Below, piece after piece: positions 485 through 63,308 of a stretch of DNA of 64,000 nt. This DNA comes from Andalucia godoyi And28 (lineage: Eukaryota; Protista; Jakobida), in contig VRVR01000047.1 in NCBI GenBank assembly GCA_009859145.1, positions 181,093 to 245,092 on the forward strand. The letters are read 5' to 3'. Made by a program: the position numbers and the translations under genes. Within the stretch, counting starts at the first letter, position 1, and every line of letters starts with the position of its first letter. Below the pieces are notes generated by a model that had not been told where the DNA came from, did no database searches, and saw only the letters and a program-made list of their open reading frames with translations.

Positions 485-488
<4 letters not shown>

Positions 489-527
<39 letters not shown>
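489..527. repeat. (TA)n microsatellite
   Basis: Perfect TA run in an intergenic spacer. Confidence 0.97.
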
Positions 528-529
<2 letters not shown>

Positions 530-20192: not shown

Positions 20193-21090
20193 CGTCGTCG
20201 CATGCTCCATGCTCCAAACTGCCATACATCCGTCTGGTCTTGCCAAACGCGTCTATGCTCCCTCCCGCCCCCAGACTATGCCTCCTCCTTCTCCTCCTTC
20301 TCCTCCGAGTTTCGGCGCCGTTTCATCACGATACGTCTGCTGCATGAAAGATTACCAAAAGACGGGGCCTTTCCAACACGAAGAGCGACCCCCCCGATGC
20401 TGGGAAACAATGGTGATTGATGCTGAATAGCAGTAGTCAGTAAGATGTGCAGCAAGCTTGAAGTGTCGCTGCAGCATCACGTGTCATTGGTAATCACAGA
20501 TAGCTAATCTCTTCCGTTCCCGTGTTTCGTTTGTCTGCCAACGGACTCGGAGTGGGTTCCGTTGGGAAACCTGCAGCCCGTTTTGCAAGAGATGCGACGT
20601 CTTCCCCCCCAGCTCACCCTCACGATACTGGCGCCGCCGCCTCGTCAGTAATCATTGGAAGAACGTTATCCGTGGCGACACCTGTCGCGTGTTGGGGCAC
20701 GTACGGTGAGGGGGGTGCAGAAAAAACTTGGGTGAGAAGTGCACAATGCAGGCATTTTAGTGGTGCTCTTAAATGTGCATTTTACCGACGGGAGTTTGGT
20801 CTCTGGGATTTTTTCTTTTAATTTTACACTACTACAAGCTTCTATTTCTCTTTCTCCTTGAGATGCGGCGGAAGTAGGAGGGGTTTTCAAAGCATTTTGT
20901 TATTTTTTTTTCTCTCCCTCCTGCAAGAAAACATCTGAAGATAAGAACAAAACAGACATACACAGACAGGACAAACAAACAAGACCAGAGAGACCCGTTA
21001 CAAACGAAAGAAGAAGAAGAGGAAGAAGAAGGGAAAGCGAGGTAGTGCATGATCGAAAGAGATGCTCTGCAGAGAGATCCGCTGGTCAGA

Positions 21091-44465: not shown

Positions 44466-44566
44466 ATCAGGCCATCAACCCATCATCCCCGCCATTTCTT
44501 CTTGCTCGATTGTCCGAAGCATCGTCGGGAATTCTTCTTGTTTTGGACATTCGAGGAGCCGGTCAC

Positions 44567-44616
44567 CACTTGGACAAAACACTTGGACGAAACACTTGGA
44601 CAAAACACTTGGTCAA
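44567..44616 (+). repeat. 13-bp tandem repeat (CACTTGGACAAAA) x about 3.8
   Basis: Units at 44567, 44580 (one mismatch), 44593 and 44606 (partial); about 125 nt upstream of the giant Cys-rich gene. Confidence 0.93.
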
Positions 44617-44741
44617 TGCTGGTCCTTCTTCAGAAAGCCCATTGCTTTGCGCAATCTCGTTCACTTTACAGAGTGCACCACACCAGGTGTTTTCCCACAC
44701 GGATTCCAACATCAGTTCTCACAACGCCCTTATTCTCCATC

Positions 44742-47700
44742 ATGCGACACAACAACCATCATTCCTGTATTTTCCTCTTATTGCTGTTGATCGTGCAGTG
44801 CCTGCCGAGTCCAGCACTGGGGTGCAACGTAGGAGAGTACCCCGATTCGGGGACTCTGCAGTGCGAACCGTGTCCCGCGGGATACTACTGCCCGGATCCA
44901 AGCAGCCAGCCGAGCGCATGCAGCGCAGGAACGTATCAGCCGCTGCTGAACCAGACGTCGTCAGCAAACTGTACAAGCTGCCCTGCGGGGACTTTCTCGC
45001 CGTCTGCGGGCAGCGCGGTCTGCCAGTCTTGTTCGCCTGGGTCGTACTCGACCGGAGGAACATCGTCGTGCGCGCAGTGTGCAGCTGGAAAGTACCAGCC
45101 GTACTACGGACAGACATCGAGTGCAAGCTGTCTGGCGTGCGTCTCGCCGGCATACACGGATGCCGCGGGGGCAGCGCGCTGTGCTACGGTGCAGCCGGGG
45201 TACCGGTTTTCGTCGGTGTCCACGAGTCCGGTCGCGTGTTCTGCGGGGCAGTATCAGCCGCAGTATGGGCAGACGGGCTGCGTGCCGTGCCCTGTCGGAT
45301 CGTACTCCACGGGGAGCGGGTGGGCGTCGTGCCTCCCGTGCGCAGCGGGAAAGGCGTCGGTGGGCGGCCTGGGCTCGTGCGCCGACTGCGTGGCCGGCAC
45401 GTTTTCTGCGAACGGCAGTGCGGCTTGCACGAACTGTCCGGCAGGGACGTACTCGGCAGGCGGCGCGTCGACGTGCACTGCGTGTGCGCCGGGGACGTAC
45501 TCCGCGGCCGGGGCGTCCGGGTGCACTGCGTGCGCCGCGGGGTTCCAGTGTGCGTCGCCCGCGGCCCCGGTTGCGTGCAACACCGGGGAGTACGCGCCGG
45601 GGGGTGCGACGGCATGCACGGTGTGCGAAGCGGGGTACGCGTGCCCGACGACGACGGCGCATGTGGCGTGCAGCCCGACGTCGGAGTACTCGGCGGCAGG
45701 AGCGACGGCGTGCGCGCCGTGTCCTGCGGGGTACCGGTGTCCGTCGGTGTCGTCTGCCCCGGTGGTGTGCGGCGCAGGGTCGTACGCGCTGCTGGGGTCC
45801 GGGACGTGCACGGTGTGTGCCGCCGGGTACGAGTGTGTCGTGCCGTGGGCGGATGCAGTGGCGTGTGCGACGGGGTACTACTCTCTTGGGGGAGGGTCGG
45901 GGACGCCGCGCTGCACGCTGTGTCCTGCGGGGAGCCAGTGTGCGACGACGTCGGCAGCACCGGCGAGCTGCGCTGCAGGCCAGTATGCGCGTGCCGGATC
46001 GACGGCGTGCACGACGTGTCCTGCGGGGCACCGGTGTCCGGTGGGCAGTGCCGCGCCGATCCCGTGCGAGAGCGGGACGTTCCGGAGCGGGACGGGGCAG
46101 GCGACGTGCGCGGCGTGCACGGCAGGGAACATCTGCCCGAACGCCGCGTCGACTGCGGTGGTGGCGTGTGCAGCAAACATGTATGCGCTGGGCGGGGCGA
46201 GTCGGTGCATGGCGTGTCCGGCGGGGTATGCGTGCCCCAATCGCGTCGGCACGTCGATCACGCAGTGTGCGGCCGGGTGGTATGCGGATGCGAATGCGGC
46301 AACGTGCACGCAGTGTCCCGCGGGGAGCTACTGTCCGTTCCGGGACGCATCGGTAGTGATCCAGTGTCCGCCGGGGACGTATTCGGTGGCGGGGTCGTCG
46401 AGGTGCACGCAGTGTCCCGCGGGCAGCTACTGTGCGGCGGGGTCGTCGACGTTCCCGACGTGCTCCAGCGGTTCGTATTCTCTTGCGGGGTCGAGCAGCT
46501 GCACGAGCTGTCCTGCCGGGTATCGGTGCCCGTCGACGACGTCTGACTACAAGGTGGCGTGTGCAGCGGGGACGTATGCAACGGGCGGGGCGACGGTGTG
46601 CTCGGCTTGCGCGGCCGGGTCGAGCTGTCCGCAGACGTCGAGCTCGACGTCCTCGGCGTGCACAGCGGGGACGTACTCCACGGGCTCGCAGGCGTACTGC
46701 ACGGTGTGCCCGGCGGGGTTTATGTGCCCGAGCGTGCTGGGGACGGGGATCGTGAAGTGTGCGAGCGGCCAGTACTCGATTGGCGCGGCGGCGGCGTGCA
46801 CGGCTGCGACGGCGGGGTTCATGGTTCCGGACGGGATGCAGGACAGGCCGCCCGTGCCGTGCCCGGTGGGGACGTACACGGCGGTGTCGGGCCAGAGCGC
46901 GTGCACGGTGTGTCCCGCGGGCTCGTCGTGCGCGAACCCGGCGGTTGCGCCGGTGCAGTGCGGGGCGGGGACGTACTCGGAGGAGGGATGGGACGTGTGC
47001 CGGGACTGTGAGGCGGGGTGGCTGTGCCCGGCGGGGTCGACGAGCCGGACGCCGGTCAACGCGCTGTGTCCTGCGGGGTCGTACTGTCCGACGGGCACTG
47101 CGAGTGCGGTGGCATGCGGGGCGGGGTCGTACCGCGGAGCGAGTGGTGGTCGCAGCGGGGCGGACTGCGCGCCATGCCCGGCCGGGTACTACTGCGCGGG
47201 GGCGACGGTGACGCCGGCGATCTGCCCGGCGGGCAGTTACTGTCCCGCAGGCTCTCCGGCTGCCAAGGCGTGCGACACGGGGCTGTACAATCCGAGCACG
47301 GGGGCGTTTTCGAAGGCGTCGTGCCTGATTTGTCCCGAGGGGTATGCGTGTGCCGCCGCGGCGACGTCTGGCACGGCGACGGCGTGTCCGGTGGGGTTCT
47401 ACTGCCCCGCGGGGACGATGGGCGCGACGCAGTTTCCGTGCCCGGCGGGGACGTACCAGCCGAGCACGAACCAGGTGTCGAATGCGTCGTGTCTTGTGTG
47501 TCCTGCGGGGTCGTACTGCCCGGCGGGGTCGAGCGCGGCGGTGCCGTGCAGTGCGGGGCGGTGGTCGGGCCTGCAGGGGCTGCACGCGGCGTACCAGTGC
47601 CAGCTGTGTCCGCCGGGGTGGGCGTGCCCGGTGGCGGGGCTGCAGGTGTCGACGACGTACACGTGTGCGAAGGGGCACTACTGTCCCGAGGGGACGAGCA

Positions 47701-50700
47701 ATGCGACGGCGCTGCCGTGTCCGTCGGGGACGTTTACGGACCGCACGAACCTGAGCAGAGCAGGGGAGTGCAACGTGTGTCTGTGGGGGAAGTACTGCCC
47801 GCTGCGGTCGTCCAGCCCGCTGCCGTCGTGCCAGCCGGGATACTACTGCCCGGGCGTCGATCCGGCGTCGGACACGCGGCTGGAGGGGTATGTGGAGCGG
47901 TATGCAATGTTCCCGAACCAGTATGCGTGCAGAGCGGGGACGTATTCGGCGTCGTCGAGTCTGTACGACGCGTCGCAGTGCAGCGGCTGTCCGCCGGGCT
48001 CGTACTGCACGGAGGGGCAGGCGGCGCCGACGGGCACGTGTCCTGCGGGGTACTACTGCCCGGCGAACACGACGTCGGCGACGCAGTTTGCGTGCGCGGC
48101 CGGCACATGGTCGGCGTCGACGGGCTTGTCTGCGCAGGCGCAGTGCAGTCCGTGCCCGGCTGGAAACTACTGTCCGGGTCTTGGCTCGCCGTCGATCGTG
48201 CAGTGCGAGGCAGGGACATACAACGACGCGGCGAACGGCACGGATGCGGCGATTTGCAGGACGTGTCCGGCGGGGAACATGTGCCCGACGATGTGCTCGG
48301 GGCCGCTGGCGTGTGCGGCGGGGCAGTATTCTGCGGCGGGTGCGGCGTCGTGCACGGCGTGTCCGGCAGGGTCGTTCTGTGCGGCAGCAAACACAACGGC
48401 GAGTGCGCTGACGGCGGGCAATGCGTGTCCAGCGGGGCTGTTCTGCCCTGCGTCGACGTCCGTGGTGCCGTCGTCGCCGGCGTTTGACTGCGGCACGGGG
48501 ACGTACTGTCCGGCGGGGTCGTCTGTGCGCCGCAGCTGCAGTCCGGGGTCGTACAACCCGTCGACGACGGTTGCGTCCCAGGAGGGGTGCCTGCCGTGCC
48601 CGGCGGGGAGCTACTGCCTGGAGGGGGCGTCGGCGCCCAGCGGGGTGTGCAGCGCGGGGTACTACTGCGTGCAGAACTCGACGTCGCCGGCGCAGACGCC
48701 GTGTCCTGGGGGCACGTACCGAGCGACGACGGGGGCGGCGGCGCTGGGGGACTGTGCGGCGTGTCCGGCGGGGAGCTACTGCCCGTCGGCGAGCGTGAGT
48801 CCGGCGACGTGTCCGGCGGGTGCGTATTGCGACCCGGGGTCGGCGGCGCCGACGCTGTGTCCTGCGTCGCGGTATGGGAATCTGACGGGGAACCGGAATG
48901 TGAGTGCGTGCGCGCTGTGCGATGCGGGGTGGTTCTGCGACACACCGGGGCTGACGGTGCCGCGGGGGCTGTGCGATCCGGGGTTCTACTGCTTGATTGG
49001 GTCGTCGGTGTCGAACCCGTCGGACATGGCGTGTCCGCCTGGCGGGTACTGCCCGCAGGGGACGGACTATCCGCGGCCGTGCGCAGCAGGGACGTTCAAC
49101 AACTTCTCGGGGGCACAGACGCAGGAGGACTGTGCGACGTGCACGCCGGGGTACTACTGCGCGGGGTCGTCGAATCCGGAGCCGACGGGCCCGTGTTCGC
49201 CGGGGTACTACTGCACGGGGGGTGCGGTGTCGCCGAACCAGTTCGAGGCGCCCCCGGGGACGTACACGACGTACGGGGCGTCTGGACCGACTCCGTGCCC
49301 GCCGGGGACGTTCAATCCGATGTATCGGCAGGCTGCGTGCCCTGCGTGTCCGGAGGGGTTCGTGTGTCCGTTCGCGAACAGCAGCCTGCTGGTTGACTGC
49401 CCGATCGGGTTCTACTGCCTGAACGGGTCGTTCGCGCCAAGCGCGTGTCCGCGGGGGACGTACCAGCCGAAGGAGAATGCGGTGTCCCTGGCGGACTGCC
49501 TGCCGTGTCCCGGTGGCCAGTACTGCTCGGAGAACTCGCTTGTGGCGCCGAGCGGCAACTGCTCCGCGGGGTACTACTGCGCGGGGGGAGCGATGCGCGA
49601 TCGGCAGGCCGACTGCCCGGTGGGGCACTACTGTCCGCGGCAGTCGAGTGCGCCGCTGGCGTGTCCGAGGGGGACGTTTTCGAATGCGCTGCTGCGGACG
49701 CAGCTGTCGGACTGCGTGGATGCGCCCGCGGGGATGTTTGTCAATGTGACGGGTGCGCATGCGGTGTCCGGGGTGTGTGGGGCCGGGTACTACTGCACGC
49801 TGCGCGCGGTGTCGAGCACGCCGACGAATGCGTCGGAGGGTGGTGGCCAGTGTCCGCCGGGGCACTTCTGCGTTGCCGGCTCGAGCACGGCGGTCGGGTG
49901 CGAGGACGGGTCGTACCAGAGCGGGTCTGGGGCCAGCAGCTGCGCGTCGTGCCCGGGGGGCTTCTACTGCGTCGCGTCGTGCAGCAGCCCGGTGGCGTGT
50001 CCGGCAGGATACTACTGTCCGCCGGGCACGGGCTACGGATGGAGGGCGTGTCCCGTGGGCACGTTTTCGAACCGCAGCGGCCTGAACAGCAGCAGCGAGT
50101 GCTCGCTGTGCGCGGGGGGCTACTTCTGCGACGAGGTTGCGCAGACGGCGTCGGTGCGCGCGTGCACGGAGGGGTTCTTCTGCCGGGCCGGGGCCGTGTC
50201 TGCGGTGGGTGCGGTCGCGTCGATTGCGGGGGCCTCCGGAGGGGTGTGTCCTGCGGGCCACTACTGCCCGGCGGGGTCTGCGGATCCGACGCCGTGTCCC
50301 GGCGGGTCGTACAACCCGAACACGGGCTCGACGAACAGGACGTCGTGCGTGCCGTGCTTGCGGGGGCAGTACTGCGCGGGCGCTGGGCTGTCTGCGCCGA
50401 CGGGAGACTGTGCGGGCGGGTACTTGTGCCTCGGGGGTGCGTCGGTTGCGAGCCCGGTGGACAACGTGACGGGGATGGCGTGTCCGACGGGGCACCGGTG
50501 CGCAGCAGGGGCTGTTGCCGCGACCCCGTGCGCTGCGGGGACGTACCAGGATGCCGCGGGGTCGTCCGTGTGCAAGCTGTGTCCGGCGGGCTATTTCTGC
50601 GGCGACTCGACGACGACGCCGTCCGGGTGCCTGCCGGGGTACTACTGCCCGAGCGGAACGCGGTCAGCGACGGAGTCCGCGTGCCTGGCGGGGACGTTTA

Positions 50701-51389
50701 ATCCGGCGTCGCACGGGACGTCGAATGCGTCGTGCGTGCCGTGCACAGCGGGGTCGTACTGCGCGGGGCTGGCGAATGCTGCGGTGTCGGGTGTGTGTGC
50801 CGCGGGCTACTACTGTCCGTCGGGCTCCGTGGCGGAGAAGCAGACGATTTGCAGCAGAGGATACTACTGTCCCGCGGGCGCGCCGGCGATGGTGCCGTGT
50901 GTCGGGACGTACTGCGCATCGACGGGTCTCTCGGCTCCGAGCGGGCCGTGTGCGGCGGGGTGGTTTTGCGCGAGCGCGGCTGTGACGTCGACGCCGACGG
51001 ATGGGACGACGGGCAGCATTTGTCCTGTGGGTCACTACTGCCCGTCGGGGTCCTCGAGCCCGTCGCCGTGCCCCGCGGGGAACTTTTCGGCGTCCACGGG
51101 GCTTGCGTCTGCGGACCAGTGTTCTGCGTGCCGGCCTGGGCACTACTGTGCGACGTCGGGTCTTGGGGCGCCGACGGGCTTGTGTGGTGCGGGGTTTTAC
51201 TGCCCGTCGGGCGCCGTGCAGCAGAGCCCGCCTGGCCTGGAGTGTCCCGTTGGATACTATTGTCCTGCGGGGTCTGCAGCTCCGGTGGTCTGTGCGCCGG
51301 GGACGTTCACCAACACCACGCAGCAGGCGGTCTGCCAGCCGTGTCCACCGGGATCGTTCTGCCACAACCCTGTTTGGGAGGTGCTCTAG
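44742..51389 (+). CDS. Giant secreted cysteine-rich repeat protein (GCC2/GCC3, ephrin-receptor-like / TNFR-like repeats), 2215 aa
   Basis: Signal peptide MRHNNHHSCIFLLLLLIVQCLPSPALG; dozens of C-P-x-G-x-Y-C repeats; many N-x-S/T sequons; no C-terminal TM or GPI segment. Confidence 0.92.
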   Translation: MRHNNHHSCIFLLLLLIVQCLPSPALGCNVGEYPDSGTLQCEPCPAGYYCPDPSSQPSACSAGTYQPLLNQTSSANCTSCPAGTFSPSAGSAVCQSCSPGSYSTGGTSSCAQCAAGKYQPYYGQTSSASCLACVSPAYTDAAGAARCATVQPGYRFSSVSTSPVACSAGQYQPQYGQTGCVPCPVGSYSTGSGWASCLPCAAGKASVGGLGSCADCVAGTFSANGSAACTNCPAGTYSAGGASTCTACAPGTYSAAGASGCTACAAGFQCASPAAPVACNTGEYAPGGATACTVCEAGYACPTTTAHVACSPTSEYSAAGATACAPCPAGYRCPSVSSAPVVCGAGSYALLGSGTCTVCAAGYECVVPWADAVACATGYYSLGGGSGTPRCTLCPAGSQCATTSAAPASCAAGQYARAGSTACTTCPAGHRCPVGSAAPIPCESGTFRSGTGQATCAACTAGNICPNAASTAVVACAANMYALGGASRCMACPAGYACPNRVGTSITQCAAGWYADANAATCTQCPAGSYCPFRDASVVIQCPPGTYSVAGSSRCTQCPAGSYCAAGSSTFPTCSSGSYSLAGSSSCTSCPAGYRCPSTTSDYKVACAAGTYATGGATVCSACAAGSSCPQTSSSTSSACTAGTYSTGSQAYCTVCPAGFMCPSVLGTGIVKCASGQYSIGAAAACTAATAGFMVPDGMQDRPPVPCPVGTYTAVSGQSACTVCPAGSSCANPAVAPVQCGAGTYSEEGWDVCRDCEAGWLCPAGSTSRTPVNALCPAGSYCPTGTASAVACGAGSYRGASGGRSGADCAPCPAGYYCAGATVTPAICPAGSYCPAGSPAAKACDTGLYNPSTGAFSKASCLICPEGYACAAAATSGTATACPVGFYCPAGTMGATQFPCPAGTYQPSTNQVSNASCLVCPAGSYCPAGSSAAVPCSAGRWSGLQGLHAAYQCQLCPPGWACPVAGLQVSTTYTCAKGHYCPEGTSNATALPCPSGTFTDRTNLSRAGECNVCLWGKYCPLRSSSPLPSCQPGYYCPGVDPASDTRLEGYVERYAMFPNQYACRAGTYSASSSLYDASQCSGCPPGSYCTEGQAAPTGTCPAGYYCPANTTSATQFACAAGTWSASTGLSAQAQCSPCPAGNYCPGLGSPSIVQCEAGTYNDAANGTDAAICRTCPAGNMCPTMCSGPLACAAGQYSAAGAASCTACPAGSFCAAANTTASALTAGNACPAGLFCPASTSVVPSSPAFDCGTGTYCPAGSSVRRSCSPGSYNPSTTVASQEGCLPCPAGSYCLEGASAPSGVCSAGYYCVQNSTSPAQTPCPGGTYRATTGAAALGDCAACPAGSYCPSASVSPATCPAGAYCDPGSAAPTLCPASRYGNLTGNRNVSACALCDAGWFCDTPGLTVPRGLCDPGFYCLIGSSVSNPSDMACPPGGYCPQGTDYPRPCAAGTFNNFSGAQTQEDCATCTPGYYCAGSSNPEPTGPCSPGYYCTGGAVSPNQFEAPPGTYTTYGASGPTPCPPGTFNPMYRQAACPACPEGFVCPFANSSLLVDCPIGFYCLNGSFAPSACPRGTYQPKENAVSLADCLPCPGGQYCSENSLVAPSGNCSAGYYCAGGAMRDRQADCPVGHYCPRQSSAPLACPRGTFSNALLRTQLSDCVDAPAGMFVNVTGAHAVSGVCGAGYYCTLRAVSSTPTNASEGGGQCPPGHFCVAGSSTAVGCEDGSYQSGSGASSCASCPGGFYCVASCSSPVACPAGYYCPPGTGYGWRACPVGTFSNRSGLNSSSECSLCAGGYFCDEVAQTASVRACTEGFFCRAGAVSAVGAVASIAGASGGVCPAGHYCPAGSADPTPCPGGSYNPNTGSTNRTSCVPCLRGQYCAGAGLSAPTGDCAGGYLCLGGASVASPVDNVTGMACPTGHRCAAGAVAATPCAAGTYQDAAGSSVCKLCPAGYFCGDSTTTPSGCLPGYYCPSGTRSATESACLAGTFNPASHGTSNASCVPCTAGSYCAGLANAAVSGVCAAGYYCPSGSVAEKQTICSRGYYCPAGAPAMVPCVGTYCASTGLSAPSGPCAAGWFCASAAVTSTPTDGTTGSICPVGHYCPSGSSSPSPCPAGNFSASTGLASADQCSACRPGHYCATSGLGAPTGLCGAGFYCPSGAVQQSPPGLECPVGYYCPAGSAAPVVCAPGTFTNTTQQAVCQPCPPGSFCHNPVWEVL

Positions 51390-51501: not shown

Positions 51502-52413
51502 CTAGATCAAGGGTTTCATTTTAAGAAGGGTTTCAGTGTCTTCATTTGACAAAATGATTCCAGTATTTTGGAAGTGGTCCCACTGCAGACAACCCAGATG
51601 CGGGTCATATACTTTAGCGATGATCGATTCTGAACCTCTGTAGAAGAACCCTGCAAATTCAGCGAATTGAGAAGACTGTGTGCTCCATTGGACGGCGTTG
51701 TGCATAACATCCTCGACGTTCGCAAGGACGTCGTCCACGAACACAACACGTCGTATGTGCGCGAAGGAATCAGTATGATGTTGCAAAAGAGCCGTAAGTG
51801 CTTCTCCTTTTGAGTTTAGATCGTTGATGAACAAGATGCCACTCTGCAGCCGAGCAGGTTGCCGACTCAGCTCCATGTCCAAAATTGGCAAGCAGTCCGC
51901 CCGCGATGGGTTGGTGATTGCGCAGGACTTCGCGAAGCACAGCCCAATGGAATTCACTTGTCGTATGGTGTCTACAGCAACAAACGGTTGTCGATGGGTG
52001 AATCCCATGACGATACAGCCTGATTCCTGGAGTTTGTGGATGCAGTCTACAGTCGAATCTTCGCAAGGCATCACCTGACACCTCGGTGCAAGACGCTTCC
52101 ACATCGGGTGTGTCGCAAGTTGCGCCTCGGCAAATGACAAGCCGGCGTTCTTCATGAACTCTGCGCGGACATCAGAAAAGTACTGGACAGTCGCCAAGGC
52201 CTGCTTTGGGATCATTACAGTATTGTCCAGATCAAGTAATACCAGCGTCTCCGCAGCCCCAACACAACTGCCACCACCACGACCCACCTCCGTCATTCGC
52301 ATACTGTCTGCATCTGCTTCAGCCGCTGTAAATTTCAACATATCCGAAAATGAAAAACACTCGGATATCGAATGCCTCATCCGCATTGTCGACAATTGCT
52401 CTTCAGGTAGCAT
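51502..52413 (-). CDS. DUF2608-family HAD-like hydrolase (bacterial type)
   Basis: HAD motif I 'LLDLDNTV', motif II 'GFTHR', 'SGILF...SKGEAL', motif IV 'VVFVDD'; overall pattern as in DUF2608. Confidence 0.72.
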   Translation of the reverse strand: MLPEEQLSTMRMRHSISECFSFSDMLKFTAAEADADSMRMTEVGRGGGSCVGAAETLVLLDLDNTVMIPKQALATVQYFSDVRAEFMKNAGLSFAEAQLATHPMWKRLAPRCQVMPCEDSTVDCIHKLQESGCIVMGFTHRQPFVAVDTIRQVNSIGLCFAKSCAITNPSRADCLPILDMELSRQPARLQSGILFINDLNSKGEALTALLQHHTDSFAHIRRVVFVDDVLANVEDVMHNAVQWSTQSSQFAEFAGFFYRGSESIIAKVYDPHLGCLQWDHFQNTGIILSNEDTETLLKMKPLI

Positions 52414-57677: not shown

Positions 57678-58141
57678 GGCCAATAAACAAAACTACGAAG
57701 AAAGTCCAGAAGAGTGCTTCTCAAAAACAAGAACGAACGGATCACAAAAGGCACCAGCGATGCATGCCCACCCGGCCATCATCCAGTGTCCAAAGACATT
57801 CCGACTTTTGTCGGGTGCGCAATGCTCAAACGTCTGAAACTACAGATGTTTTTTCCTTTCTTTTTTGACCCGTACGGCAGTTGCGGATTCTTGGTTATTT
57901 TATTTTTTTAATTATTATGTTTTTCGGTTGGAAATCTCAGTTTTCTTCGACCACCGTGTACAGCTAGGTGCCAATTTTCTGAGTTGGTGCTGGATGATGC
58001 CTGCACTGTACAAGTGGTCTACATTTATCAGCGAGAATATGATGTGGCTAATGCAGAACAGAACAGGACAGAATAAAACTCCTCTGGCTGCATATGACTT
58101 TATTATCATTATTTTCTTTTGACGGACCGATTTTGCTAACA

Positions 58142-61100
58142 TCAGTGGCTCGGCTGCGGAACGAGAACTGCGATTGGAGGAAGATCCTCGGCGGGAAAAA
58201 CGTCAATCAAAGTCGTGCGACTGCTTAGAAGGCGAATTGGTTTCGAAGCGTCAGCACAGATATTTCCCCACAAACAAGACTTCGAAGCTGACAGAATCTC
58301 GCTGTTCAACTCGATAACTGTTTCTGCGAAGCACCGGCGACCAGTTGCTACAGAAAACGGTAAGCGCGGAACAAGAACAATGCATGCTCGGGGCGAACTT
58401 GCGTCAACACTTCCCGAGTCAAACGCCCTGTAGTATGCGACAAACTCTTGCTCGAGCTTCCCTGACAAAAACAGCGGATGATACTTACCACGAGAAAGTA
58501 AATCACTCGCTTGATTCCGCAGTGACAGCAACACGCGCGTCACATGGATCTTCCCGAGATTCTGGTCTGCATAAATACCGGAGAAGTCACGCTTCTTTTC
58601 AAGATCCTCACTACTTGCAAGACACCGTTCACGCAACGCATAATCCACCGGACGTCTGTTATCCGGATCAACAAGCGAGAAATCCATAATTTCGTTGCCC
58701 TGATATACGTCAGGAATGCCGGGGGACGTCATTTTCACGATCGTCTGCGACAATGATACCAAGAACCCCATTGGTGCAAGCGTTTTCCCGACAAACTCGG
58801 AGATCAGTTGCGTAATTTCAGGAATGCTGTAAATGGAGTCGATGCGCGAGTTCATGCGCTGTTCGAACTCGTCATTCACGTTAATCCAAGATGTGTGTAC
58901 TTTCGCTTCTCGAACGGCCTTCATCATATATCCCCGTAATCGGTCTCGAGAGAGCGGCCATGAGCCGCACACAGTCTGAAGCAACAGCCAATCTGTCGGG
59001 GCATCCAAGGACGTCGAAAACGATCGATACTGCTGCCACAGTTGTAAAAACAAGTCGGGGACGTCAGACAACGCATTTAAACGAGCACGCACATCTTCCG
59101 ATCGCTTCGTATCGTGTGTAGAGGAGGACAGCATAGAGTACGGGAAATTCGTTGACCTCTGCACCATACACGCATGGAATGCACTAACATGGACTCCAAA
59201 ATCAACAGGATCTGTGCCAACTTCGCACAGCGACAGAAGGGGATAGAACCTGTACATGAACGTATCCTCAATGCCTTTGGCCATCACAGGCCCAGTTGCT
59301 TGCTGCAGTCTCGCTATCCAAGCGCCACAAGCATCATCCTGCAGAGCGTTCTGGAAAATGGACCGCAGATTCGAAAAATCCAAGTTGGGATTCGCAGCGG
59401 CGGCTTGAGCAAGAGCGTGTTCAACATATGCGAAGTCGCCTTCTCTTGAGAATGGCCATGACTTCCTGTAGAAAACCCTGTACACAGGAAAATGGACAAG
59501 AAATGCTGCAATCATTTCAGCAGAAAGAGGAAATTGTGACGGTGCTTGTGATGACAAGAGACGCACTTCGGGAAGGAAAAACATTTGCACGACCACCCTT
59601 TTTGAATCCAGTCGCATCCTTTCGATGCTTTCGGAATCCGTTTTTGTTCCGGTTTGCGATTCATACAGCTCCAGCCACCGCGTCCGCCTTCCTTGAGAAA
59701 TGAACAAGCCATTCATAAATCTCAAGAAATCGTATCCTGTCGTGCCATGCAAGGAAAACACATTCAAGGGATCCAGATCTTCAAATGATTGCAGAATCTT
59801 CTCCACCAGTACATACAGCGGCCCCGGAGAAGCCCGCTGAAGACTGTTTAGGTACCCGTACGGATCTCGGAGACCGTCTGTATGGTCAAGACGAATCCCA
59901 GATATGACACCCTGTTTGCATAGATTGTTCAAAATCAAATCATGTGAAGCTTGGAATACTTTCGGGTCCTCCTGGCGAACTCCAATTAAAGAGGGAACGT
60001 CAAAGAATCGGCGGTAATTGATGTGCTCACAGCCTTCTTTCCATAAGCAGAGACGGTAGTTTTGCTCCATCACAATCCGCTGAACAAGTTCTACATCGAC
60101 AGAATTAAGACCTTTGGAAAGTGCGTCCCGCTCAAAACGACGAGCAATTTCCAAGCAAGAGTCGCGCTTCAATGGGAAACATAAATTTGCAGGAATGTAC
60201 ATAAGAAAATACGAACCTACATCTTCCTCAGAGTAGCACGTAGAATTTGCAATTTCCGAGAACAGACGGATGTCCAGTTCGCGAGCTGCAAAGCAGTCCT
60301 GCAAAGACTTTCCAAGCACGGGTGCCATCAGCTTGTCGCCCCTGTCCCAGTCAACGAATGTGTCAAAAAAGGCAAAATATTTTGAACGAGGACCTTCTCG
60401 AAACGCATCCCACCACCACAAATTGGAAGGGCCGCTTGAAAGAGCAGCTAGATGATTCGGAACAAAATCTGCAAGAATATCCATGGAACGAGAAACATCG
60501 TGAAGCTCTTGAAAAGAGGATGCTATTTCGGGATTTAGAGTAGAATAATCGCACCCATCGTATCCATGAGAACTTCCGCGGACGGCAGAGCACAGTGGAC
60601 TGAGGTACAGAGTGCGGATGCCAAGACGCTTCAGATATTCCATGGGAACATTTCTGAGAGGGAACTCTTGATGCAGCTGAAGACGATACGTAGCAGAAGG
60701 AATGCGAGGAGAATGTAAATGCCGTTCCAACAACACGGCACCCGCTGCAGGGAATCGGATCTCTCGCTCTCGGAGATTCACTTCAACGGAGGAAACAGGA
60801 ACAGAAAAATCATTAGAAGACCAGCGAACAGACCACAGTGCAGTTGTTGAGGCAATTGAGGGATGTTCAGACACGGAAGCAAAAGACGCCCATTCCGGGG
60901 AGCTGGCAAGCGAAGCCAAGAGCAGGAAGCAACGGGTATCCGCAGGATACATGCTGAGCGACTGATCACCAGGGACGTACAGTATGGCCAGCACCGAAGG
61001 AGAAACAGCCTTCACTACTGGCCGCCACTTTCTTCCGCGATTTCGGACAGAAGACGCAAACCCTTTTTCAAACTCCTTGATGTGAGGGAGGATGTCATTA

Positions 61101-62716
61101 TTGCGAATGTTGATGAGCGTTTTGTAGACGTCCAAGCACTTTTGATGGCTATCGGGATTTCCAGCCTTCTTGGACACTTCAGTCCACTGCAATTTGGAAT
61201 TGAGGAAGGTTGCTTCGTCTTGCGGATCCGGAACCTCGTGTTCGTCAAAATTCGGAAACTCCTTCCGACGGCCCTCTGAAACCAGCTTGCCAAATTCTGC
61301 ATCAAAATCCGTAAAGAAACAAAATGGAGACGATGATTTCCACTCCTGACCTTGGAAAATCATCGGGGTCTCCGGTCCGAGGAGTAAGAGAGCACTTGCT
61401 GCTATCCACGCATCGTCCTTGATCACATGATGCAACCGATCACCGGTCGGCCTATTCCCTATCTGATCATGATTTTGGATGCATGTGATGAACTGACCGA
61501 CAGGCACTGTCCCCGGATCGCCGCTCCCTCTGAGTTTCTTCTGATTCACCGACCACTGACCAGAGTACAGCCAGCCTTTCTGGATGCATGTGGAAAGCTC
61601 TTCCATGGAGCCGCTGAAATCCTTGTAGTACAGCTGCTGCTCACCGGTAAGTGCAACACGCACGGAATGGTGAAAATCGTCCGCCCATAGTCCGTCCAAC
61701 ACTGCGGGGTTTTCAGAATCAACGCTACCACGTTCTCGTGTCATGAGCCCAGCGGAATTTCGGTCATCCTCTCCAAACAGCAGGGTACCAGGAAATCGTT
61801 GATGCATGACGCTGCAAATTTCGTTGAGAATGTGAACCGCGCTGTCATCCGCAATGGCATGAGTAGCATCAAGACGATAGCCATCAAATCCAAACGTTTC
61901 AGAAAGATAAGGCAAGAGCTCAAACAGAAAATTCCGAGAAAGCGCAGACATTTCATCATTTCCATCGAGATTCCATGACGGCCCCCAAATGGTGTTGTGC
62001 TTCTCGGAAAAAAATTCCGGCGAGAATTTCCCCAAGATGTTACCTCTGATTCCCAAATGATTCAGAACAACATCACAAAGAACCCGGATACCCAGACGAT
62101 GAGCTTCATCAATCAGTGCTCGAAGCTCAGCCGGAGTTCCATAGCATCGCGATGGAGCATACAACATAACTCCATCATATCCCCAGTTCCATCGCCCGAC
62201 CCAGTCTGCCAACGGCATAATCTCAATGCAATCCACGCCAATGCTCTTCAAATACTGCAGCTTGGAAAGCACCCCAGCATACGTTCCCGTCGAAGAAAAC
62301 GTCCCGACGTGCAACTCATATATAACAGATGGCCACCATTCTCCTGGCGTGCGCTGTTGCTGGTCGCCGTTTCGAGTGTGAAAGCACACGTCGAATTCGG
62401 ACCATTCAAACACACCGTTCGGCAAGAAGCGCGACGCAGGATCCGTCCACTGCTCGTCTTCCTTGCCGTCGATTTTGAACTTATACCAGACGACATCCGA
62501 CGGCGAGACCTGCGGAACCGCAACTATCCAGAGTTGCGTCGTTTCATTTTCTAATTTCATGTTCACTGTGCAAACACGCAGCATACCGGCATTTTTTGCG
62601 TCTGGATTAACAACGTAAAGCAATTCTACAGACATGGATGCACGCGTACACCAGGTTCGGATGTACAATTGACGCTCCGATAGAACATAGCGAGGTCCGA
62701 GGGTCAACGAGCTCAT
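58142..62716 (-). CDS. treZ-treY: Fused malto-oligosyltrehalose trehalohydrolase (TreZ, N-terminal) and malto-oligosyltrehalose synthase (TreY, C-terminal)
   Basis: TreZ: IYELHVGTFS, NWGYDGV, DVVLNHLG, RLDATHAI, FGEDDRN, WADDFHH, QNHDQIGNR. TreY from about 60705: ATYRLQL, SSHGYD, DFVPNHL, NYRRFFDV, GIRLDHTDGL, VEKIL, GTTGYDF, GPVMAKGIEDT, STHDTKRSEDVRARL, PDVYQGNE, LVDPDNRRPVDY. One uninterrupted frame. Confidence 0.96.
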   Translation of the reverse strand: MSSLTLGPRYVLSERQLYIRTWCTRASMSVELLYVVNPDAKNAGMLRVCTVNMKLENETTQLWIVAVPQVSPSDVVWYKFKIDGKEDEQWTDPASRFLPNGVFEWSEFDVCFHTRNGDQQQRTPGEWWPSVIYELHVGTFSSTGTYAGVLSKLQYLKSIGVDCIEIMPLADWVGRWNWGYDGVMLYAPSRCYGTPAELRALIDEAHRLGIRVLCDVVLNHLGIRGNILGKFSPEFFSEKHNTIWGPSWNLDGNDEMSALSRNFLFELLPYLSETFGFDGYRLDATHAIADDSAVHILNEICSVMHQRFPGTLLFGEDDRNSAGLMTRERGSVDSENPAVLDGLWADDFHHSVRVALTGEQQLYYKDFSGSMEELSTCIQKGWLYSGQWSVNQKKLRGSGDPGTVPVGQFITCIQNHDQIGNRPTGDRLHHVIKDDAWIAASALLLLGPETPMIFQGQEWKSSSPFCFFTDFDAEFGKLVSEGRRKEFPNFDEHEVPDPQDEATFLNSKLQWTEVSKKAGNPDSHQKCLDVYKTLINIRNNDILPHIKEFEKGFASSVRNRGRKWRPVVKAVSPSVLAILYVPGDQSLSMYPADTRCFLLLASLASSPEWASFASVSEHPSIASTTALWSVRWSSNDFSVPVSSVEVNLREREIRFPAAGAVLLERHLHSPRIPSATYRLQLHQEFPLRNVPMEYLKRLGIRTLYLSPLCSAVRGSSHGYDGCDYSTLNPEIASSFQELHDVSRSMDILADFVPNHLAALSSGPSNLWWWDAFREGPRSKYFAFFDTFVDWDRGDKLMAPVLGKSLQDCFAARELDIRLFSEIANSTCYSEEDVGSYFLMYIPANLCFPLKRDSCLEIARRFERDALSKGLNSVDVELVQRIVMEQNYRLCLWKEGCEHINYRRFFDVPSLIGVRQEDPKVFQASHDLILNNLCKQGVISGIRLDHTDGLRDPYGYLNSLQRASPGPLYVLVEKILQSFEDLDPLNVFSLHGTTGYDFLRFMNGLFISQGRRTRWLELYESQTGTKTDSESIERMRLDSKRVVVQMFFLPEVRLLSSQAPSQFPLSAEMIAAFLVHFPVYRVFYRKSWPFSREGDFAYVEHALAQAAAANPNLDFSNLRSIFQNALQDDACGAWIARLQQATGPVMAKGIEDTFMYRFYPLLSLCEVGTDPVDFGVHVSAFHACMVQRSTNFPYSMLSSSTHDTKRSEDVRARLNALSDVPDLFLQLWQQYRSFSTSLDAPTDWLLLQTVCGSWPLSRDRLRGYMMKAVREAKVHTSWINVNDEFEQRMNSRIDSIYSIPEITQLISEFVGKTLAPMGFLVSLSQTIVKMTSPGIPDVYQGNEIMDFSLVDPDNRRPVDYALRERCLASSEDLEKKRDFSGIYADQNLGKIHVTRVLLSLRNQASDLLSRGKYHPLFLSGKLEQEFVAYYRAFDSGSVDASSPRACIVLVPRLPFSVATGRRCFAETVIELNSEILSASKSCLWGNICADASKPIRLLSSRTTLIDVFPAEDLPPIAVLVPQPSH

Positions 62717-63308
62717 TCCTGTAGTAAACGTTACCTGCACGAAGCACACACAGCTAAACAAAAATTATTAATATTAATAACAATGATGTTATTATTGTTA
62801 TTATTATGTGCTATTGTTGTAAGTTACGGTTTACGTCTTGTAAAGGAATTCTCGTGATTGAGAATCCCTTTCCCCTCGCTCCTTATCAACGATTGCAAAA
62901 CCTTTTTTCTTTTGTGCAAGTTCAACCGAACAGTCGAAGAATCGAACGAGAATTTTCACGAAACTTGAAGGCGGAAATTACTGGACCATCAAAAAAGCCA
63001 TTTTGGGAAAACAAGACGCCGGCATCTACAGTTGACGCAGGCTGGGTCGATTGGTAGGGGGAAATGGTAACGATTAAAACATGATGTGCGAACTGCGATG
63101 TGCAGCCACGAAAGCCTGGATCCGGAGGAAAAACTTCGGTTGCTGCTGGGGCAATTCCAAGGCTTGTAAGAACAGGGCGGTCCCACACACCCTGGAATGT
63201 GCAGCGGAAAAAAAAGAAGAAACGGTGATTACTGATTCATTGCAATTAAAAACAAAGGAAAACGGCTGCTTTGCGAAACGAGATGAGCACACAGCATCTG
63301 TCAGAATG

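What the first reader, a model, noticed from the sequence alone, without database searches (positions are those of the whole stretch)
58142..62716. One-gene glycogen-to-trehalose pathway: natural TreZ-TreY fusion in a eukaryote
Seen: a 1524-aa intronless ORF with a complete TreZ (CBM48-like N-terminus; catalytic D in RLDATH, E in GEDDRN, D in NHDQ) joined by a very short linker (ERHLHSPRIPSATYRLQL) to a complete TreY (D in RLDHTDG, E in VEKIL, D in THDTKR). It has no targeting peptide and sits among eukaryotic genes with host-style spacers. Established: TreY converts the reducing-end alpha-1,4 bond of maltodextrin/glycogen to alpha-1,1 and TreZ releases trehalose; the pathway is described from bacteria and archaea as separate genes, while eukaryotes typically use TPS/TPP. 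Inference: lateral acquisition plus fusion gives an ATP/UDP-glucose-independent route from cytosolic glycogen to trehalose, plausibly for cyst, osmotic or anoxic survival, with possible substrate channelling.
Basis: partly seen in the sequence, partly recalled or inferred. Interest (0 to 1): 0.88.

Follow-up and report, generated by a model that had tools for sequence, protein, structure and literature searches.

The report
Fused trehalose-making enzyme in a jakobid
A soil protist (Andalucia godoyi) carries a nuclear gene of bacterial type that joins the two enzymes converting short starch-like chains into trehalose; the route has been described only from bacteria and archaea, although such fusions are common in bacteria and a second, uncultured eukaryote has the same one.

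Summary
Window 58142-62716 (minus strand) is an uninterrupted 1524-aa ORF. It holds a complete three-domain TreZ (aa 1-664), about five linker residues, and a complete TreY (aa 670-1524). All six catalytic residues are in place.

The window is the last 64 kb of contig VRVR01000047.1 of the jakobid Andalucia godoyi. There are no N gaps, the neighbours are eukaryotic, codon usage matches the host, and the spacers are host-like. Contamination is very unlikely.

- Natural TreY/TreZ fusions are common in bacteria in both orders (105 Y-Z and 14 Z-Y among the top 120 hits).
- The gene is not unique among eukaryotes. An uncultured eukaryote (JGI contig beside a Urb2 gene) has the same fusion with the same junction (LLERH...TYRLQL), but its TreZ half is catalytically dead. 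An amoebozoan transcriptome has a stand-alone TreZ that pairs with this one.
- It is two steps, not a whole glycogen-to-trehalose pathway. TreY needs free reducing ends, so a debranching enzyme or amylase is still required.

Each half is closer to stand-alone bacterial enzymes, often encoded as adjacent treZ-treY genes, than to the bacterial fusions. This favours an independent fusion. Activity, expression and physiological role are untested.

The parts
58142..62716 (-). Whole coding sequence of the TreZ-TreY fusion: 1524 codons plus the stop at 58142-58144. No intron, no N gap.
60725..62716 (-). TreZ half (malto-oligosyltrehalose trehalohydrolase, GH13), aa 1-664. It has an N-terminal beta-sandwich (about aa 1-110), a (beta/alpha)8 catalytic domain, and a C-terminal beta domain (about aa 565-664).
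   Evidence: TIGR02402, 490.5 bits. 2BHU, 365 bits. Model and Foldseek matches to TreZ structures over the full length.
61868..61870 (-). Codon of D283, the TreZ catalytic nucleophile, in YRLDATHA
61769..61771 (-). Codon of E316, the TreZ acid/base, in LFGEDDRN
61466..61468 (-). Codon of D417, the TreZ transition-state stabiliser, in QNHDQIGN
60710..60724 (-). Junction or linker, aa 665-669 (RHLHS). R665-H666 are shared with the uncultured eukaryotic homologue (LLERH).
58145..60709 (-). TreY half (malto-oligosyltrehalose synthase, GH13), aa 670-1524. It starts with PRIPSATYRLQL, the conserved N-terminus of stand-alone TreY.
   Evidence: TIGR02401, 698 bits, above the cut-off. 6LCU, 365 bits. 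N-terminus compared.
59885..59887 (-). Codon of D944, the TreY nucleophile, in IRLDHTDG
59801..59803 (-). Codon of E972, the TreY acid/base, in VLVEKILQ
59111..59113 (-). Codon of D1202 in the TreY motif STHDTKRS
62760..62780 (.). AT-only tract in the upstream spacer. It is one of nine tracts of 18 or more A/T bases in the window, and all nine lie outside the long ORFs listed (eight in spacers between them, one upstream of the first).
57895..57918 (.). AT-only tract in the downstream spacer, of the same kind as in other spacers of the window

Best explanation
This is a genuine nuclear gene of Andalucia godoyi that descends from bacterial treZ and treY genes.

It encodes a single polypeptide, probably cytosolic, with two active GH13 enzymes.
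- The N-terminal TreZ half then cuts off that terminal disaccharide as free trehalose.
Neither step needs ATP, UDP-glucose or trehalose-6-phosphate.

The most likely history is that a treZ-treY gene pair, adjacent and co-oriented as in many bacterial operons, was transferred. The two genes then became one reading frame through loss of the treZ stop and of the few intergenic bases. A eukaryote cannot translate a second cistron, so fusion is a simple way to keep both activities.

The fusion predates the split between A. godoyi and at least one other, uncultured eukaryote, which carries the same junction.

Shown here: gene structure, domain completeness, catalytic residues, host context, and relatives. 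Inferred: enzymatic activity, direction of flux, cytosolic location, the order of transfer and fusion, and any stress role. The protein still depends on another enzyme to supply free linear chains.
For: Gene and domains:
- Intact 1524-aa ORF.
- Full-length TreY match above the curated cut-off and a near-full TreZ match.
- All six catalytic residues aligned to solved TreZ and TreY.
- The TreZ half models as a complete three-domain TreZ.

Host context:
- The contig is A. godoyi VRVR01000047.1. That genome is compact, and about 88% of the 864 genes examined in the genome paper lack introns.
- No N gaps in the window.
- Neighbours are eukaryotic: DHX37-type helicase, F-box/LRR, Mis12, equilibrative nucleoside transporter, Ephrin_rec_like.
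- RSCU correlation with the pooled neighbours is 0.79, in the upper range seen for the other ORFs (0.33-0.85). GC is 0.49.
- Host-type AT tracts lie in both flanking spacers.

Relatives:
- No close bacterial relative: at most 50% identity for the TreZ half and 38% for the TreY half.
- Each half scores higher against stand-alone bacterial enzymes than against any bacterial Z-Y fusion.
- In the three operons of close stand-alone relatives that I examined, the order is glgX-treZ-treY with gaps of 27 nt, 92 nt and a 4-nt overlap. Among 80 named genomes, 23 have treZ directly followed by treY.
- The TreY next to the closest TreZ starts MLARPRIPSATYRLQL, the same residues as at the junction here.
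- The exhaustive search gives one outstanding relative, P0363/P0510 (653 bits against 474 for the next). It has the same domain order and the same junction, LLERH...P..TYRLQL. It lies on a contig with a Urb2 ribosome-biogenesis gene, about 50% GC and long intronless ORFs.
- The TreY halves of the two proteins pair in 100 of 100 NJ bootstraps and lie outside the bacterial fusion clades.

Precedent: an engineered TreY-TreZ fusion is bifunctional and raises trehalose in rice (PMC4163841).
Against: - No expression data or enzyme assay could be consulted.
- The TreZ half falls short of NCBIfam's curated equivalog cut-off (490.5 against 538.8 bits). Several active-site loops are modelled with low confidence (pLDDT below 50 at 170-189 and 417-429).
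- The gene is the last one on its contig, 1284 bp from the end, so only one flank carries identifiable eukaryotic genes.
- Bacterial Z-Y fusions exist and the deep branching of both halves is unresolved. A pre-fused, unsampled donor cannot be excluded.
- The homologue in the uncultured eukaryote has lost TreZ catalysis, so the two-step function is not always maintained in this lineage.
- Whether A. godoyi stores glycogen, or has an enzyme that releases free maltooligosaccharides, could not be checked.
Confidence: 0.75

Rival explanations
1. The gene was acquired already fused, from a bacterium that had a TreZ-TreY (Z-Y order) fusion gene. No fusion step took place in eukaryotes.
For: Fourteen of the top 120 full-length hits are bacterial-type Z-Y fusions of 1311-1727 aa. 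They include Marinimicrobium, a Pirellulales MAG and a Sericytochromatia bin, and the three examined sit in bacterial glg/tre gene clusters or on a bacterial bin. Deep nodes in both half-trees have low support.
Against: All 120 listed stand-alone TreZ score above every Z-Y fusion against the TreZ half (404-428 against at most 370 BLAST bits). Most stand-alone TreY also outrank the fusions. Neither half groups with a bacterial Z-Y clade in NJ trees. The bacterial Z-Y fusions are themselves not one clade.
Confidence: 0.2
2. Bacterial contamination or an assembly chimera: the gene belongs to a food bacterium or a culture contaminant and was joined to the end of a eukaryotic contig.
For: The culture was fed live bacteria and contained other bacteria, and scaffolds were filtered only by BLASTn. 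The gene is the last one on the contig.
Against: - The sequence is continuous, without Ns.
- Codon usage and GC match the neighbours.
- Host-type AT tracts lie on both sides, and there is no bacterial gene or operon partner in the remaining 1284 bp.
- The nearest bacterial proteins are at most 50% and 38% identical.
- The closest relative of all lies on another eukaryote-type contig, beside Urb2.
Confidence: 0.03
3. The protein no longer makes free trehalose. For example, it may work only as a TreY-type transglycosylase making non-reducing maltooligosyltrehalose, or as a general alpha-glucan hydrolase, or it may be an unexpressed relic.
For: In the uncultured eukaryotic homologue the TreZ half has lost all three catalytic residues and two conserved segments, while its TreY half is intact. 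The TreZ half here is below the curated family cut-off.
Against: Here both catalytic triads and the family motifs are intact across 1524 codons without a stop. On the TreZ side these are WNWGYDG, DDFHH and NHDQIGNR. On the TreY side they are NYRRFFD, MAKGIEDT, THDTKRSED and LVDPDNRRPVD.
Confidence: 0.1
4. TreZ/TreY is an old eukaryotic trait that was inherited vertically and lost many times. On this view it was not a recent transfer into jakobids.
For: Relatives occur in three very different eukaryotic sources: a jakobid, an uncultured eukaryote, and the amoebozoan Clastostelium recurvatum. The TreZ halves of A. godoyi and Clastostelium pair in 99/100 (Kimura) and 59/60 (gamma) NJ bootstraps.
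Against: - Only these few eukaryotic sequences appeared in searches of billions of proteins.
- The literature reports only TPS/TPP in eukaryotes and no TreY/TreZ in metazoans.
- The two paired TreZ sequences have the highest mean distances measured (0.595 and 0.55, against 0.514 for a sample of the others). They share only 11 rare residues, against 9 and 8 for the next sequences, so long-branch attraction is not excluded.
Confidence: 0.04

Closest known systems
Uncultured-eukaryote homologue P0363/P0510 (1438 aa; JGI metagenome 3300042934, contigs Ga0456364_0005482 and _0012157)
   Same: Same Z-then-Y order and the same junction (GAILLERH...VPASTYRLQL). The TreY half is 42% identical and intact. 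It is an intronless ORF in a compact contig of about 50% GC, beside a Urb2 gene. The TreY halves pair in 100/100 bootstraps.
   Different: Its TreZ half is a pseudoenzyme: RLD has become RLL, GEDDRN has become AKDDQN, NHDQ is lost, and there are two large deletions. It has no TIGR02402 match. Its neighbours differ (a GH13 alpha-glucosidase upstream) and there is no synteny with the window.
Bacterial TreZ-TreY (Z-Y order) fusion proteins, e.g. Marinimicrobium sp. ABcell2 (1629 aa), a Pirellulales MAG (1727 aa) and a Sericytochromatia bin (1543 aa)
   Same: Same two enzymes in the same order on one chain.
   Different: - They are 36-43% (TreZ half) and 29-35% (TreY half) identical, which is less similar than stand-alone enzymes are.
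- They do not group with the A. godoyi protein in either half-tree.
- Two of the three examined sit in bacterial glgE/glgX/glgB/treS clusters.
- Several have longer linkers or inserts.
Actinobacterial TreY-TreZ (Y-Z order) fusions, about 1370 aa (Nocardioides, Janibacter, Propionicimonas); JGI name 'malto-oligosyltrehalose synthase/malto-oligosyltrehalose trehalohydrolase'
   Same: A natural single-chain TreY plus TreZ.
   Different: Opposite domain order. They largely cluster together, apart from the A. godoyi protein, with moderate support in the TreY tree (bootstrap 96 for the TreZ part and 50 for the TreY part).
Stand-alone TreZ (GH13; D. radiodurans 2BHU, S. solfataricus 1EH9) and TreY (Arthrobacter 6LCU, Sulfolobus 1IV8) of the bacterial and archaeal TreX-TreY-TreZ pathway
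   Same: Same folds, catalytic residues and family motifs. These are the best PDB matches by sequence and by structure. The closest sequences of all are stand-alone enzymes from glgX-treZ-treY operons.
   Different: They are separate polypeptides, encoded in operons together with a debranching enzyme, in prokaryotes.
BvMTSH, an engineered in-frame TreY-TreZ fusion from Brevibacterium helvolum expressed in rice (PMC4163841)
   Same: One chain with both activities, working inside a eukaryotic cell and raising trehalose without a trehalose-6-phosphate intermediate.
   Different: It is man-made, in Y-Z order, and is a bacterial sequence under plant promoters.
Eukaryotic TPS-TPP fusion proteins (the usual eukaryotic trehalose route)
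   Same: Two consecutive trehalose-forming steps fused in one eukaryotic protein.
   Different: The folds and chemistry are unrelated. That route uses UDP-glucose plus glucose-6-phosphate and passes through trehalose-6-phosphate. It is an analogy, not homology.

Membership tests
TreY, malto-oligosyltrehalose synthase (EC 5.4.99.15; NCBIfam TIGR02401) | Full-length match to the family model above the curated cut-off | tested here: met
   698.3 bits against a cut-off of 498.65; aa 673-1466 cover model positions 1-798 of 838.
TreY, malto-oligosyltrehalose synthase (EC 5.4.99.15; NCBIfam TIGR02401) | GH13 catalytic Asp/Glu/Asp and family motifs aligned to solved TreY | tested here: met
   D944, E972 and D1202 sit in RLDHTDG, VEKIL and THDTKRSED, aligned to 6LCU (365 bits). 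NYRRFF, MAKGIEDT and LVDPDNRRPVD are also present.
TreY, malto-oligosyltrehalose synthase (EC 5.4.99.15; NCBIfam TIGR02401) | Converts the reducing-end alpha-1,4 bond of maltooligosaccharides to alpha,alpha-1,1 | not testable with these tools
   Needs an enzyme assay.
TreZ, malto-oligosyltrehalose trehalohydrolase (EC 3.2.1.141; NCBIfam TIGR02402) | Match to the family model above the curated cut-off | tested here: not met
   490.5 bits against a cut-off of 538.8, although E is 5e-147 and coverage is 9-508 of 545. TreZ outscores every other non-TreY family by more than 400 bits. The shortfall reflects divergence, not a different family.
TreZ, malto-oligosyltrehalose trehalohydrolase (EC 3.2.1.141; NCBIfam TIGR02402) | Catalytic Asp/Glu/Asp and TreZ motifs aligned to solved TreZ | tested here: met
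   D283, E316 and D417 are present. WNWGYDG, DDFHH and NHDQIGNR are invariant in alignments with 29 relatives. The best PDB sequence hits are TreZ (2BHU 365 bits, 1EH9 320 bits).
TreZ, malto-oligosyltrehalose trehalohydrolase (EC 3.2.1.141; NCBIfam TIGR02402) | Three-domain architecture: N-terminal CBM48-type beta-sandwich, (beta/alpha)8 barrel, C-terminal beta domain | tested here: met
   Pfam does not detect CBM_48. The AlphaFold model (pTM 0.86, mean pLDDT 76) has beta strands at 7-82 and 567-666. Its top nine Foldseek hits are eight TreZ structures plus one closely related putative alpha-amylase (3M07), aligned over about 650-670 columns with TM 0.82-0.85 normalised to the target.
TreZ, malto-oligosyltrehalose trehalohydrolase (EC 3.2.1.141; NCBIfam TIGR02402) | Releases trehalose from maltooligosyltrehalose | not testable with these tools
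   Needs an enzyme assay.
Bacterial Z-Y order TreZ-TreY fusion lineage(s) | Same domain order on one polypeptide | tested here: met
   Fourteen bacterial-type proteins have TreZ before TreY.
Bacterial Z-Y order TreZ-TreY fusion lineage(s) | Both halves descend from that lineage, that is, they nest within it in trees | tested here: not met
   Both halves are more similar to stand-alone enzymes. NJ trees give no supported grouping with bacterial Z-Y proteins, but only NJ with bootstrap was possible.
Resident nuclear gene of Andalucia godoyi (as opposed to a contaminant) | Physically linked to eukaryotic genes, with host composition and host-type spacers | tested here: met
Resident nuclear gene of Andalucia godoyi (as opposed to a contaminant) | Transcribed and polyadenylated as one mRNA | not testable with these tools
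   RNA-seq exists according to PMC7050145 but cannot be read here.
Complete glycogen-to-trehalose pathway (TreX/GlgX + TreY + TreZ) | A debranching or chain-releasing enzyme that supplies linear maltooligosaccharides with free reducing ends | not tested
   None is present in the fusion or elsewhere in the window. The rest of the A. godoyi genome could not be searched. In the bacterial operons examined, glgX lies directly upstream.

The most novel reading that the evidence does not exclude
There may be a eukaryote-specific lineage of TreZ-TreY genes that arose by its own fusion event. It would have spread between very distant eukaryotes: a jakobid, an uncultured eukaryote, and an amoebozoan that has the TreZ part. 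It would also be diversifying in function. In one member the TreZ half has become a catalytically dead module, so that protein would make non-reducing maltooligosyltrehalose rather than free trehalose. If this is right, a third trehalose route exists in eukaryotes and offers a natural series for studying how transferred operons become fusion genes.
Probability: 0.3. Interest if true: 0.6.

Novelty: new member of a known kind. Interest (0 to 1): 0.45.

Why it matters
Reviews state that eukaryotes make trehalose only through TPS/TPP (PMC1769515). A dedicated search found no TreY/TreZ in animals (PMC8277472). I found no paper that reports TreY/TreZ in a eukaryote.

If the protein is active, it shows that a free-living protist has a route to trehalose that needs no nucleotide sugar and bypasses trehalose-6-phosphate. 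It would also be a clear example of two adjacent bacterial genes surviving transfer to a eukaryote by becoming one reading frame.

The near-zero linker and the relative with a dead TreZ half give natural material for testing whether such fusions channel intermediates. A compact natural fusion that already works with eukaryotic codon usage could interest people who engineer trehalose production in plants or yeasts.

The chemistry and the fused architecture are both already known from bacteria, so the novelty is evolutionary and taxonomic, not mechanistic.

Tried and rejected
- **Telomere repeats or a recognisable gene in the last 1284 bp.** I looked for these to anchor the distal flank and found none.
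- **Rfam scan of the window.** No match.
- **Synteny between the window and the uncultured-eukaryote contig.** None was found. The downstream ORFs are unrelated, and tblastx matches are confined to the fusion gene.
- **JGI metagenome scan with the two-eukaryote alignment.** It returned 66 loci. Those I inspected (GC mostly 0.53-0.62) carry stand-alone TreY ORFs, apparently with a separate treZ downstream. None was eukaryote-like.
- **Naming a donor phylum.** A scan of 185,579 bacterial and archaeal genomes put the nearest TreZ in Acidobacteriota, Verrucomicrobiota, Gemmatimonadota, Myxococcota, Chloroflexota, Planctomycetota and others, at 35-46% identity. No donor can be named.
- **Literature searches.** Searches for TreY/TreZ together with eukaryote, protist and amoeba terms, and for Andalucia plus trehalose, found no report.
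- **Testing the Andalucia-Clastostelium TreZ pairing.** Rare shared residues numbered 11, against 9 and 8 for the next sequences. With either partner removed, the other is unresolved. The pairing stays tentative.
- **Clastostelium TreY.** I found no evidence for one among the best TreY hits, but names were not available for most of them.
- **Rejected readings.** I rejected 'contaminant' and 'the first natural TreY/TreZ fusion'.

Full report
**1. The observation**

Window 58142-62761 holds a single long ORF on the minus strand. From its first ATG at 62716 it encodes 1524 residues, and the stop lies at 58142-58144.

NCBIfam places a complete TreY at aa 673-1466 (TIGR02401, model 1-798 of 838, 698 bits, above the cut-off of 498.65). 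It places a nearly complete TreZ at aa 39-551 (TIGR02402, model 9-508 of 545, E 5e-147, 490.5 bits). That second score is just under the curated cut-off of 538.8. Pfam sees only the generic alpha-amylase domain.

Against solved structures the best sequence matches are:
- Deinococcus radiodurans TreZ (2BHU, 365 bits)
- an Arthrobacter-type TreY (6LCU, 365 bits)
- the Sulfolobus enzymes

- D283 (RLDATH), E316 (GEDDRN) and D417 (NHDQ) in TreZ
- D944 (RLDHTDG), E972 (VEKIL) and D1202 (THDTKR) in TreY

.

An AlphaFold model of aa 1-669, built on 30 sequences, has pTM 0.86 and mean pLDDT 76. It has an N-terminal beta-sandwich, a barrel and a C-terminal beta domain. Its top nine Foldseek hits are eight TreZ crystal structures and one closely related putative alpha-amylase (3M07). 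They align over about 650-670 columns with TM 0.82-0.85 normalised to the target. The 'CBM48-like N-terminus' that Pfam misses is therefore supported by structure.

The linker is about five residues. Bacterial TreZ proteins end a few residues after the equivalent of GAVLLE664. P670-L681 (PRIPSATYRLQL) equals residues 5-16 of a stand-alone bacterial TreY (MLARPRIPSATYRLQL).

The N-terminus aligns with bacterial TreZ N-termini without an extension. This is the only basis for 'no targeting peptide'.

**2. Where it lies**

The exact protein is recorded once, on NCBI GCA_009859145.1 contig VRVR01000047.1 (245,092 bp). The window is the last 64 kb of that contig, and the gene is its last gene, 1284 bp from the end.

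The accession belongs to the jakobid flagellate Andalucia godoyi. Its genome of about 20 Mb is described as compact, and only 12% of the 864 genes examined there have introns. The culture was fed live bacteria, and scaffolds were screened for contaminants only by BLASTn (PMC7050145). An intronless ORF is therefore normal for this host. Contamination had to be tested.

**3. Contaminant or chimera?**

- The other large ORFs include a DHX37-type DEAH helicase, an F-box/LRR protein, a PrimPol-like protein, Mis12, an MFS transporter, a giant Ephrin_rec_like repeat protein, an equilibrative nucleoside transporter and a methyltransferase. This is a eukaryotic set on alternating strands.
- The fusion gene has GC 0.49 and GC3 0.51, like its neighbours. 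Its relative synonymous codon usage correlates at r = 0.79 with the pooled other ORFs, in the upper part of the range those ORFs show among themselves (0.33-0.85).
- Tracts of 18 or more A/T bases occur nine times in the window, always outside the long ORFs. One lies in each spacer flanking the gene (62760-62780 and 57895-57918).
- No bacterial protein is more than about 50% identical to the TreZ half or 38% identical to the TreY half.
- The closest relative of all lies on another eukaryote-type contig (section 5).

I rate contamination or chimerism at about 3%.

**4. Are fusions new?**

No. Of the 120 best full-length hits, 105 are Y-Z order fusions of about 1370 aa. They come from Nocardioides and other Actinobacteria, and JGI already names them 'synthase/trehalohydrolase'. 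Another 14 are Z-Y order fusions of 1311-1727 aa, among them Marinimicrobium sp. and a Pirellulales MAG.

I examined three Z-Y proteins in context. Two lie in ordinary bacterial alpha-glucan clusters with glgE, glgX, glgB and treS-mak. The third lies on a contig labelled Sericytochromatia.

**5. Relatives of each half**

I searched with each half separately. The best TreZ matches are stand-alone enzymes at 37-50% identity (named ones include Gemmataceae, Tautonia and Verrucomicrobia). The best TreY matches are stand-alone enzymes at 34-38% identity (named ones include Rubrobacter, Acidobacteria and Deinococcus).

By BLAST bits, every one of the 120 listed stand-alone TreZ outranks every bacterial Z-Y fusion (404-428 against at most 370). 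Most stand-alone TreY do the same.

Two eukaryotic sequences stand out.

The first is P0122, the second-best TreZ hit. It is a 695-aa complete ORF from the EukProt transcriptome of the protosteloid amoebozoan Clastostelium recurvatum.
- It is a bona fide TreZ (TIGR02402 at 588 bits, with CBM48).
- It has a 30-residue acidic and lysine-rich insert that the five bacterial sequences aligned with it lack.
- It ends where bacterial TreZ ends, so it is not fused.

The second came from an exhaustive phmmer search of 1.84 billion representative proteins with the TreY half. That search gave one outlier, P0363 (653 bits against 474 for the next).
- P0363 and its 90%-cluster mate P0510 are 1438-aa proteins from one JGI metagenome (3300042934).
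- They lie on two contigs that are 98.0% identical over 6.1 kb, which suggests two haplotypes or strains.
- The longer contig (11.8 kb, about 50% GC, long intronless ORFs) also carries a 1073-aa Urb2/Npa2 ribosome-biogenesis protein with a long acidic tract. Upstream and divergently transcribed is a GH13 alpha-glucosidase. This is a eukaryotic contig.
- The protein has the same Z-then-Y order and the same junction: GAILLERH-ETEVYV-PASTYRLQL, against GAVLLERH-LHSPRI-PSATYRLQL here. It also shares C-domain motifs (WRP.V, LW.VRWS) that are not seen in the five bacterial TreZ sequences aligned.
- Its TreY half is intact (TIGR02401 at 632 bits).
- Its TreZ half is eroded: RLD has become RLL, GEDDRN has become AKDDQN, NHDQ is lost, and two conserved segments are deleted. 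It gives no TIGR02402 hit.

**6. Trees**

Only neighbour-joining with bootstrap was possible.

The TreY halves of A. godoyi and the uncultured eukaryote pair in 100 of 100 replicates. The pair's deeper position is unresolved, and it lies in neither the bacterial Z-Y groups nor the Y-Z clade.

The TreZ half pairs with Clastostelium in 99/100 replicates (Kimura distances) and 59/60 (gamma distances). However:
- These two sequences have the highest mean distances measured (mean p-distance 0.595 and 0.55, against 0.514 for a sample of the others).
- With either one removed, the other is unresolved.
- They share 11 rare residues, against 9 and 8 for the next-best sequences.

Long-branch attraction is therefore not excluded.

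**7. How the fusion probably arose**

In three bacterial contigs that carry close stand-alone relatives, the order is glgX-treZ-treY on one strand. The treZ-treY spacing is 27 nt, 92 nt, or a 4-nt overlap.

Among the 80 named bacterial genomes with the nearest TreZ:
- 23 have treZ directly followed by treY
- 21 have the opposite order
- 12 have treY further downstream

.

Losing a stop codon and a few bases in such a pair yields exactly the junction seen here. A eukaryote translates only the first ORF of an mRNA (established knowledge), so fusion keeps both activities.

The shared junction shows that the event predates the split of A. godoyi from the uncultured eukaryote. Whether it happened in a eukaryote or in an unsampled donor bacterium cannot be decided. 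I put independent fusion ahead of a pre-fused donor, at roughly 0.55 to 0.2. No donor phylum can be named, because the nearest TreZ are scattered over at least eight phyla at 35-46% identity.

**8. What it most likely does**

By homology, the TreY half isomerises the reducing-end alpha-1,4 bond of a linear maltooligosaccharide to alpha,alpha-1,1. The TreZ half then hydrolyses the adjacent alpha-1,4 bond and releases trehalose. The hydrolysis step makes the pair run towards trehalose (pathway as described in PMC11046441 and PMC1769515). An engineered TreY-TreZ fusion is bifunctional and doubles trehalose in rice (PMC4163841), so a single-chain enzyme can work in a eukaryotic cell.

'One-gene glycogen-to-trehalose pathway' goes too far.
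- TreY needs free reducing ends.
- The bacterial operons pair these genes with a debranching enzyme.
- In eukaryotic glycogen the only reducing end is attached to glycogenin, and the usual eukaryotic debranching enzyme releases glucose rather than chains (established knowledge).

A. godoyi therefore needs an isoamylase-type enzyme, an amylase, or some other source of maltodextrin. None is in the window, and the rest of the genome could not be searched. Roles in cysts, osmotic stress or anoxia, and substrate channelling, remain untested ideas.

**9. Novelty and verdict**

The chemistry, both folds and the fused architecture are all known. What appears new is the host domain and a eukaryotic fusion lineage.
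- A survey states that eukaryotes have only TPS/TPP (PMC1769515).
- A dedicated search found no TreY/TreZ in metazoans (PMC8277472).
- The A. godoyi genome paper does not mention trehalose or glycogen.
- My literature searches found no report of TreY/TreZ in any eukaryote. That library lacks most subscription journals.

I class the finding as a new member of a known kind. It is of moderate interest: a clean case of bacterial genes becoming a eukaryotic fusion gene, and a likely third trehalose route in eukaryotes. It is not a new mechanism.

Noticed in passing
L008:1395-5711 and L075:1441-5757 (JGI metagenome 3300042934): An uncultured eukaryote carries the same TreZ-TreY fusion, but its TreZ half has lost all three catalytic residues and two conserved segments while its TreY half is intact. 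It is a natural pseudoenzyme-enzyme fusion. Two contigs that are 98.0% identical over 6.1 kb suggest two haplotypes or strains.
   Followed up: partly
L008:3-830 (minus strand) and L075:1-876 (minus strand): A GH13 alpha-glucosidase / oligo-1,6-glucosidase-type gene lies directly upstream of the fusion gene in the uncultured eukaryote and is transcribed divergently. Pfam Alpha-amylase gives 334 bits, and the best PDB matches are alpha-glucosidases. This may be a small alpha-glucan gene cluster in a eukaryote.
   Followed up: partly
protein P0122 (EukProt EP01113, Clastostelium recurvatum transcript TRINITY_DN1649): A stand-alone, apparently functional TreZ occurs in an amoebozoan transcriptome. 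It has a 30-residue acidic and lysine-rich insert that the five bacterial homologues aligned with it lack. It pairs with the A. godoyi TreZ half in NJ trees, but long-branch attraction is not excluded. No matching TreY from that species was identified.
   Followed up: partly
window 44502-51389 (+), within the GC-rich stretch at about 44-52 kb: A 2295-aa ORF with Ephrin_rec_like repeats and GC 0.69 sits in a window that is otherwise about 0.50 GC. The many overlapping long ORFs on both strands there look like by-products of the GC richness.
   Followed up: no
window 51502-52413 (-): A 303-aa ORF matches DUF2608 (PF11019, 88 bits). As far as I recall this family is mostly bacterial, so it may be another transferred gene. 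It has no NCBIfam match.
   Followed up: no
window 18492-20246 (-): An ORF with a Herpes_UL52-type primase domain. It is PrimPol-like, an ordinary eukaryotic gene despite the Pfam family name.
   Followed up: no
window 485-529: A 45-bp A/T-only tract consisting mainly of (AT)n dinucleotide repeats. It is the longest of the nine AT-only tracts, and all nine lie outside the long ORFs.
   Followed up: no
loci L076-L155 (named bacterial genomes): The order of treZ and treY varies freely among bacteria with related TreZ. In 23 genomes treZ is directly followed by treY, in 21 the order is reversed, and in 12 something lies between them. Fusions exist in both orders, which suggests repeated independent fusion of this enzyme pair.
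   Followed up: partly
proteins P0380, P0430, P0466, P0479, P0481 (about 1670-1720 aa) and P0284, P0340, P0359 (about 1390-1425 aa): Other long bacterial proteins carry TreY at the C-terminal end behind a non-TreZ N-terminal part. Three of them have a precomputed PF02446 domain. These would be further natural fusions of TreY with other alpha-glucan enzymes.
   Followed up: no
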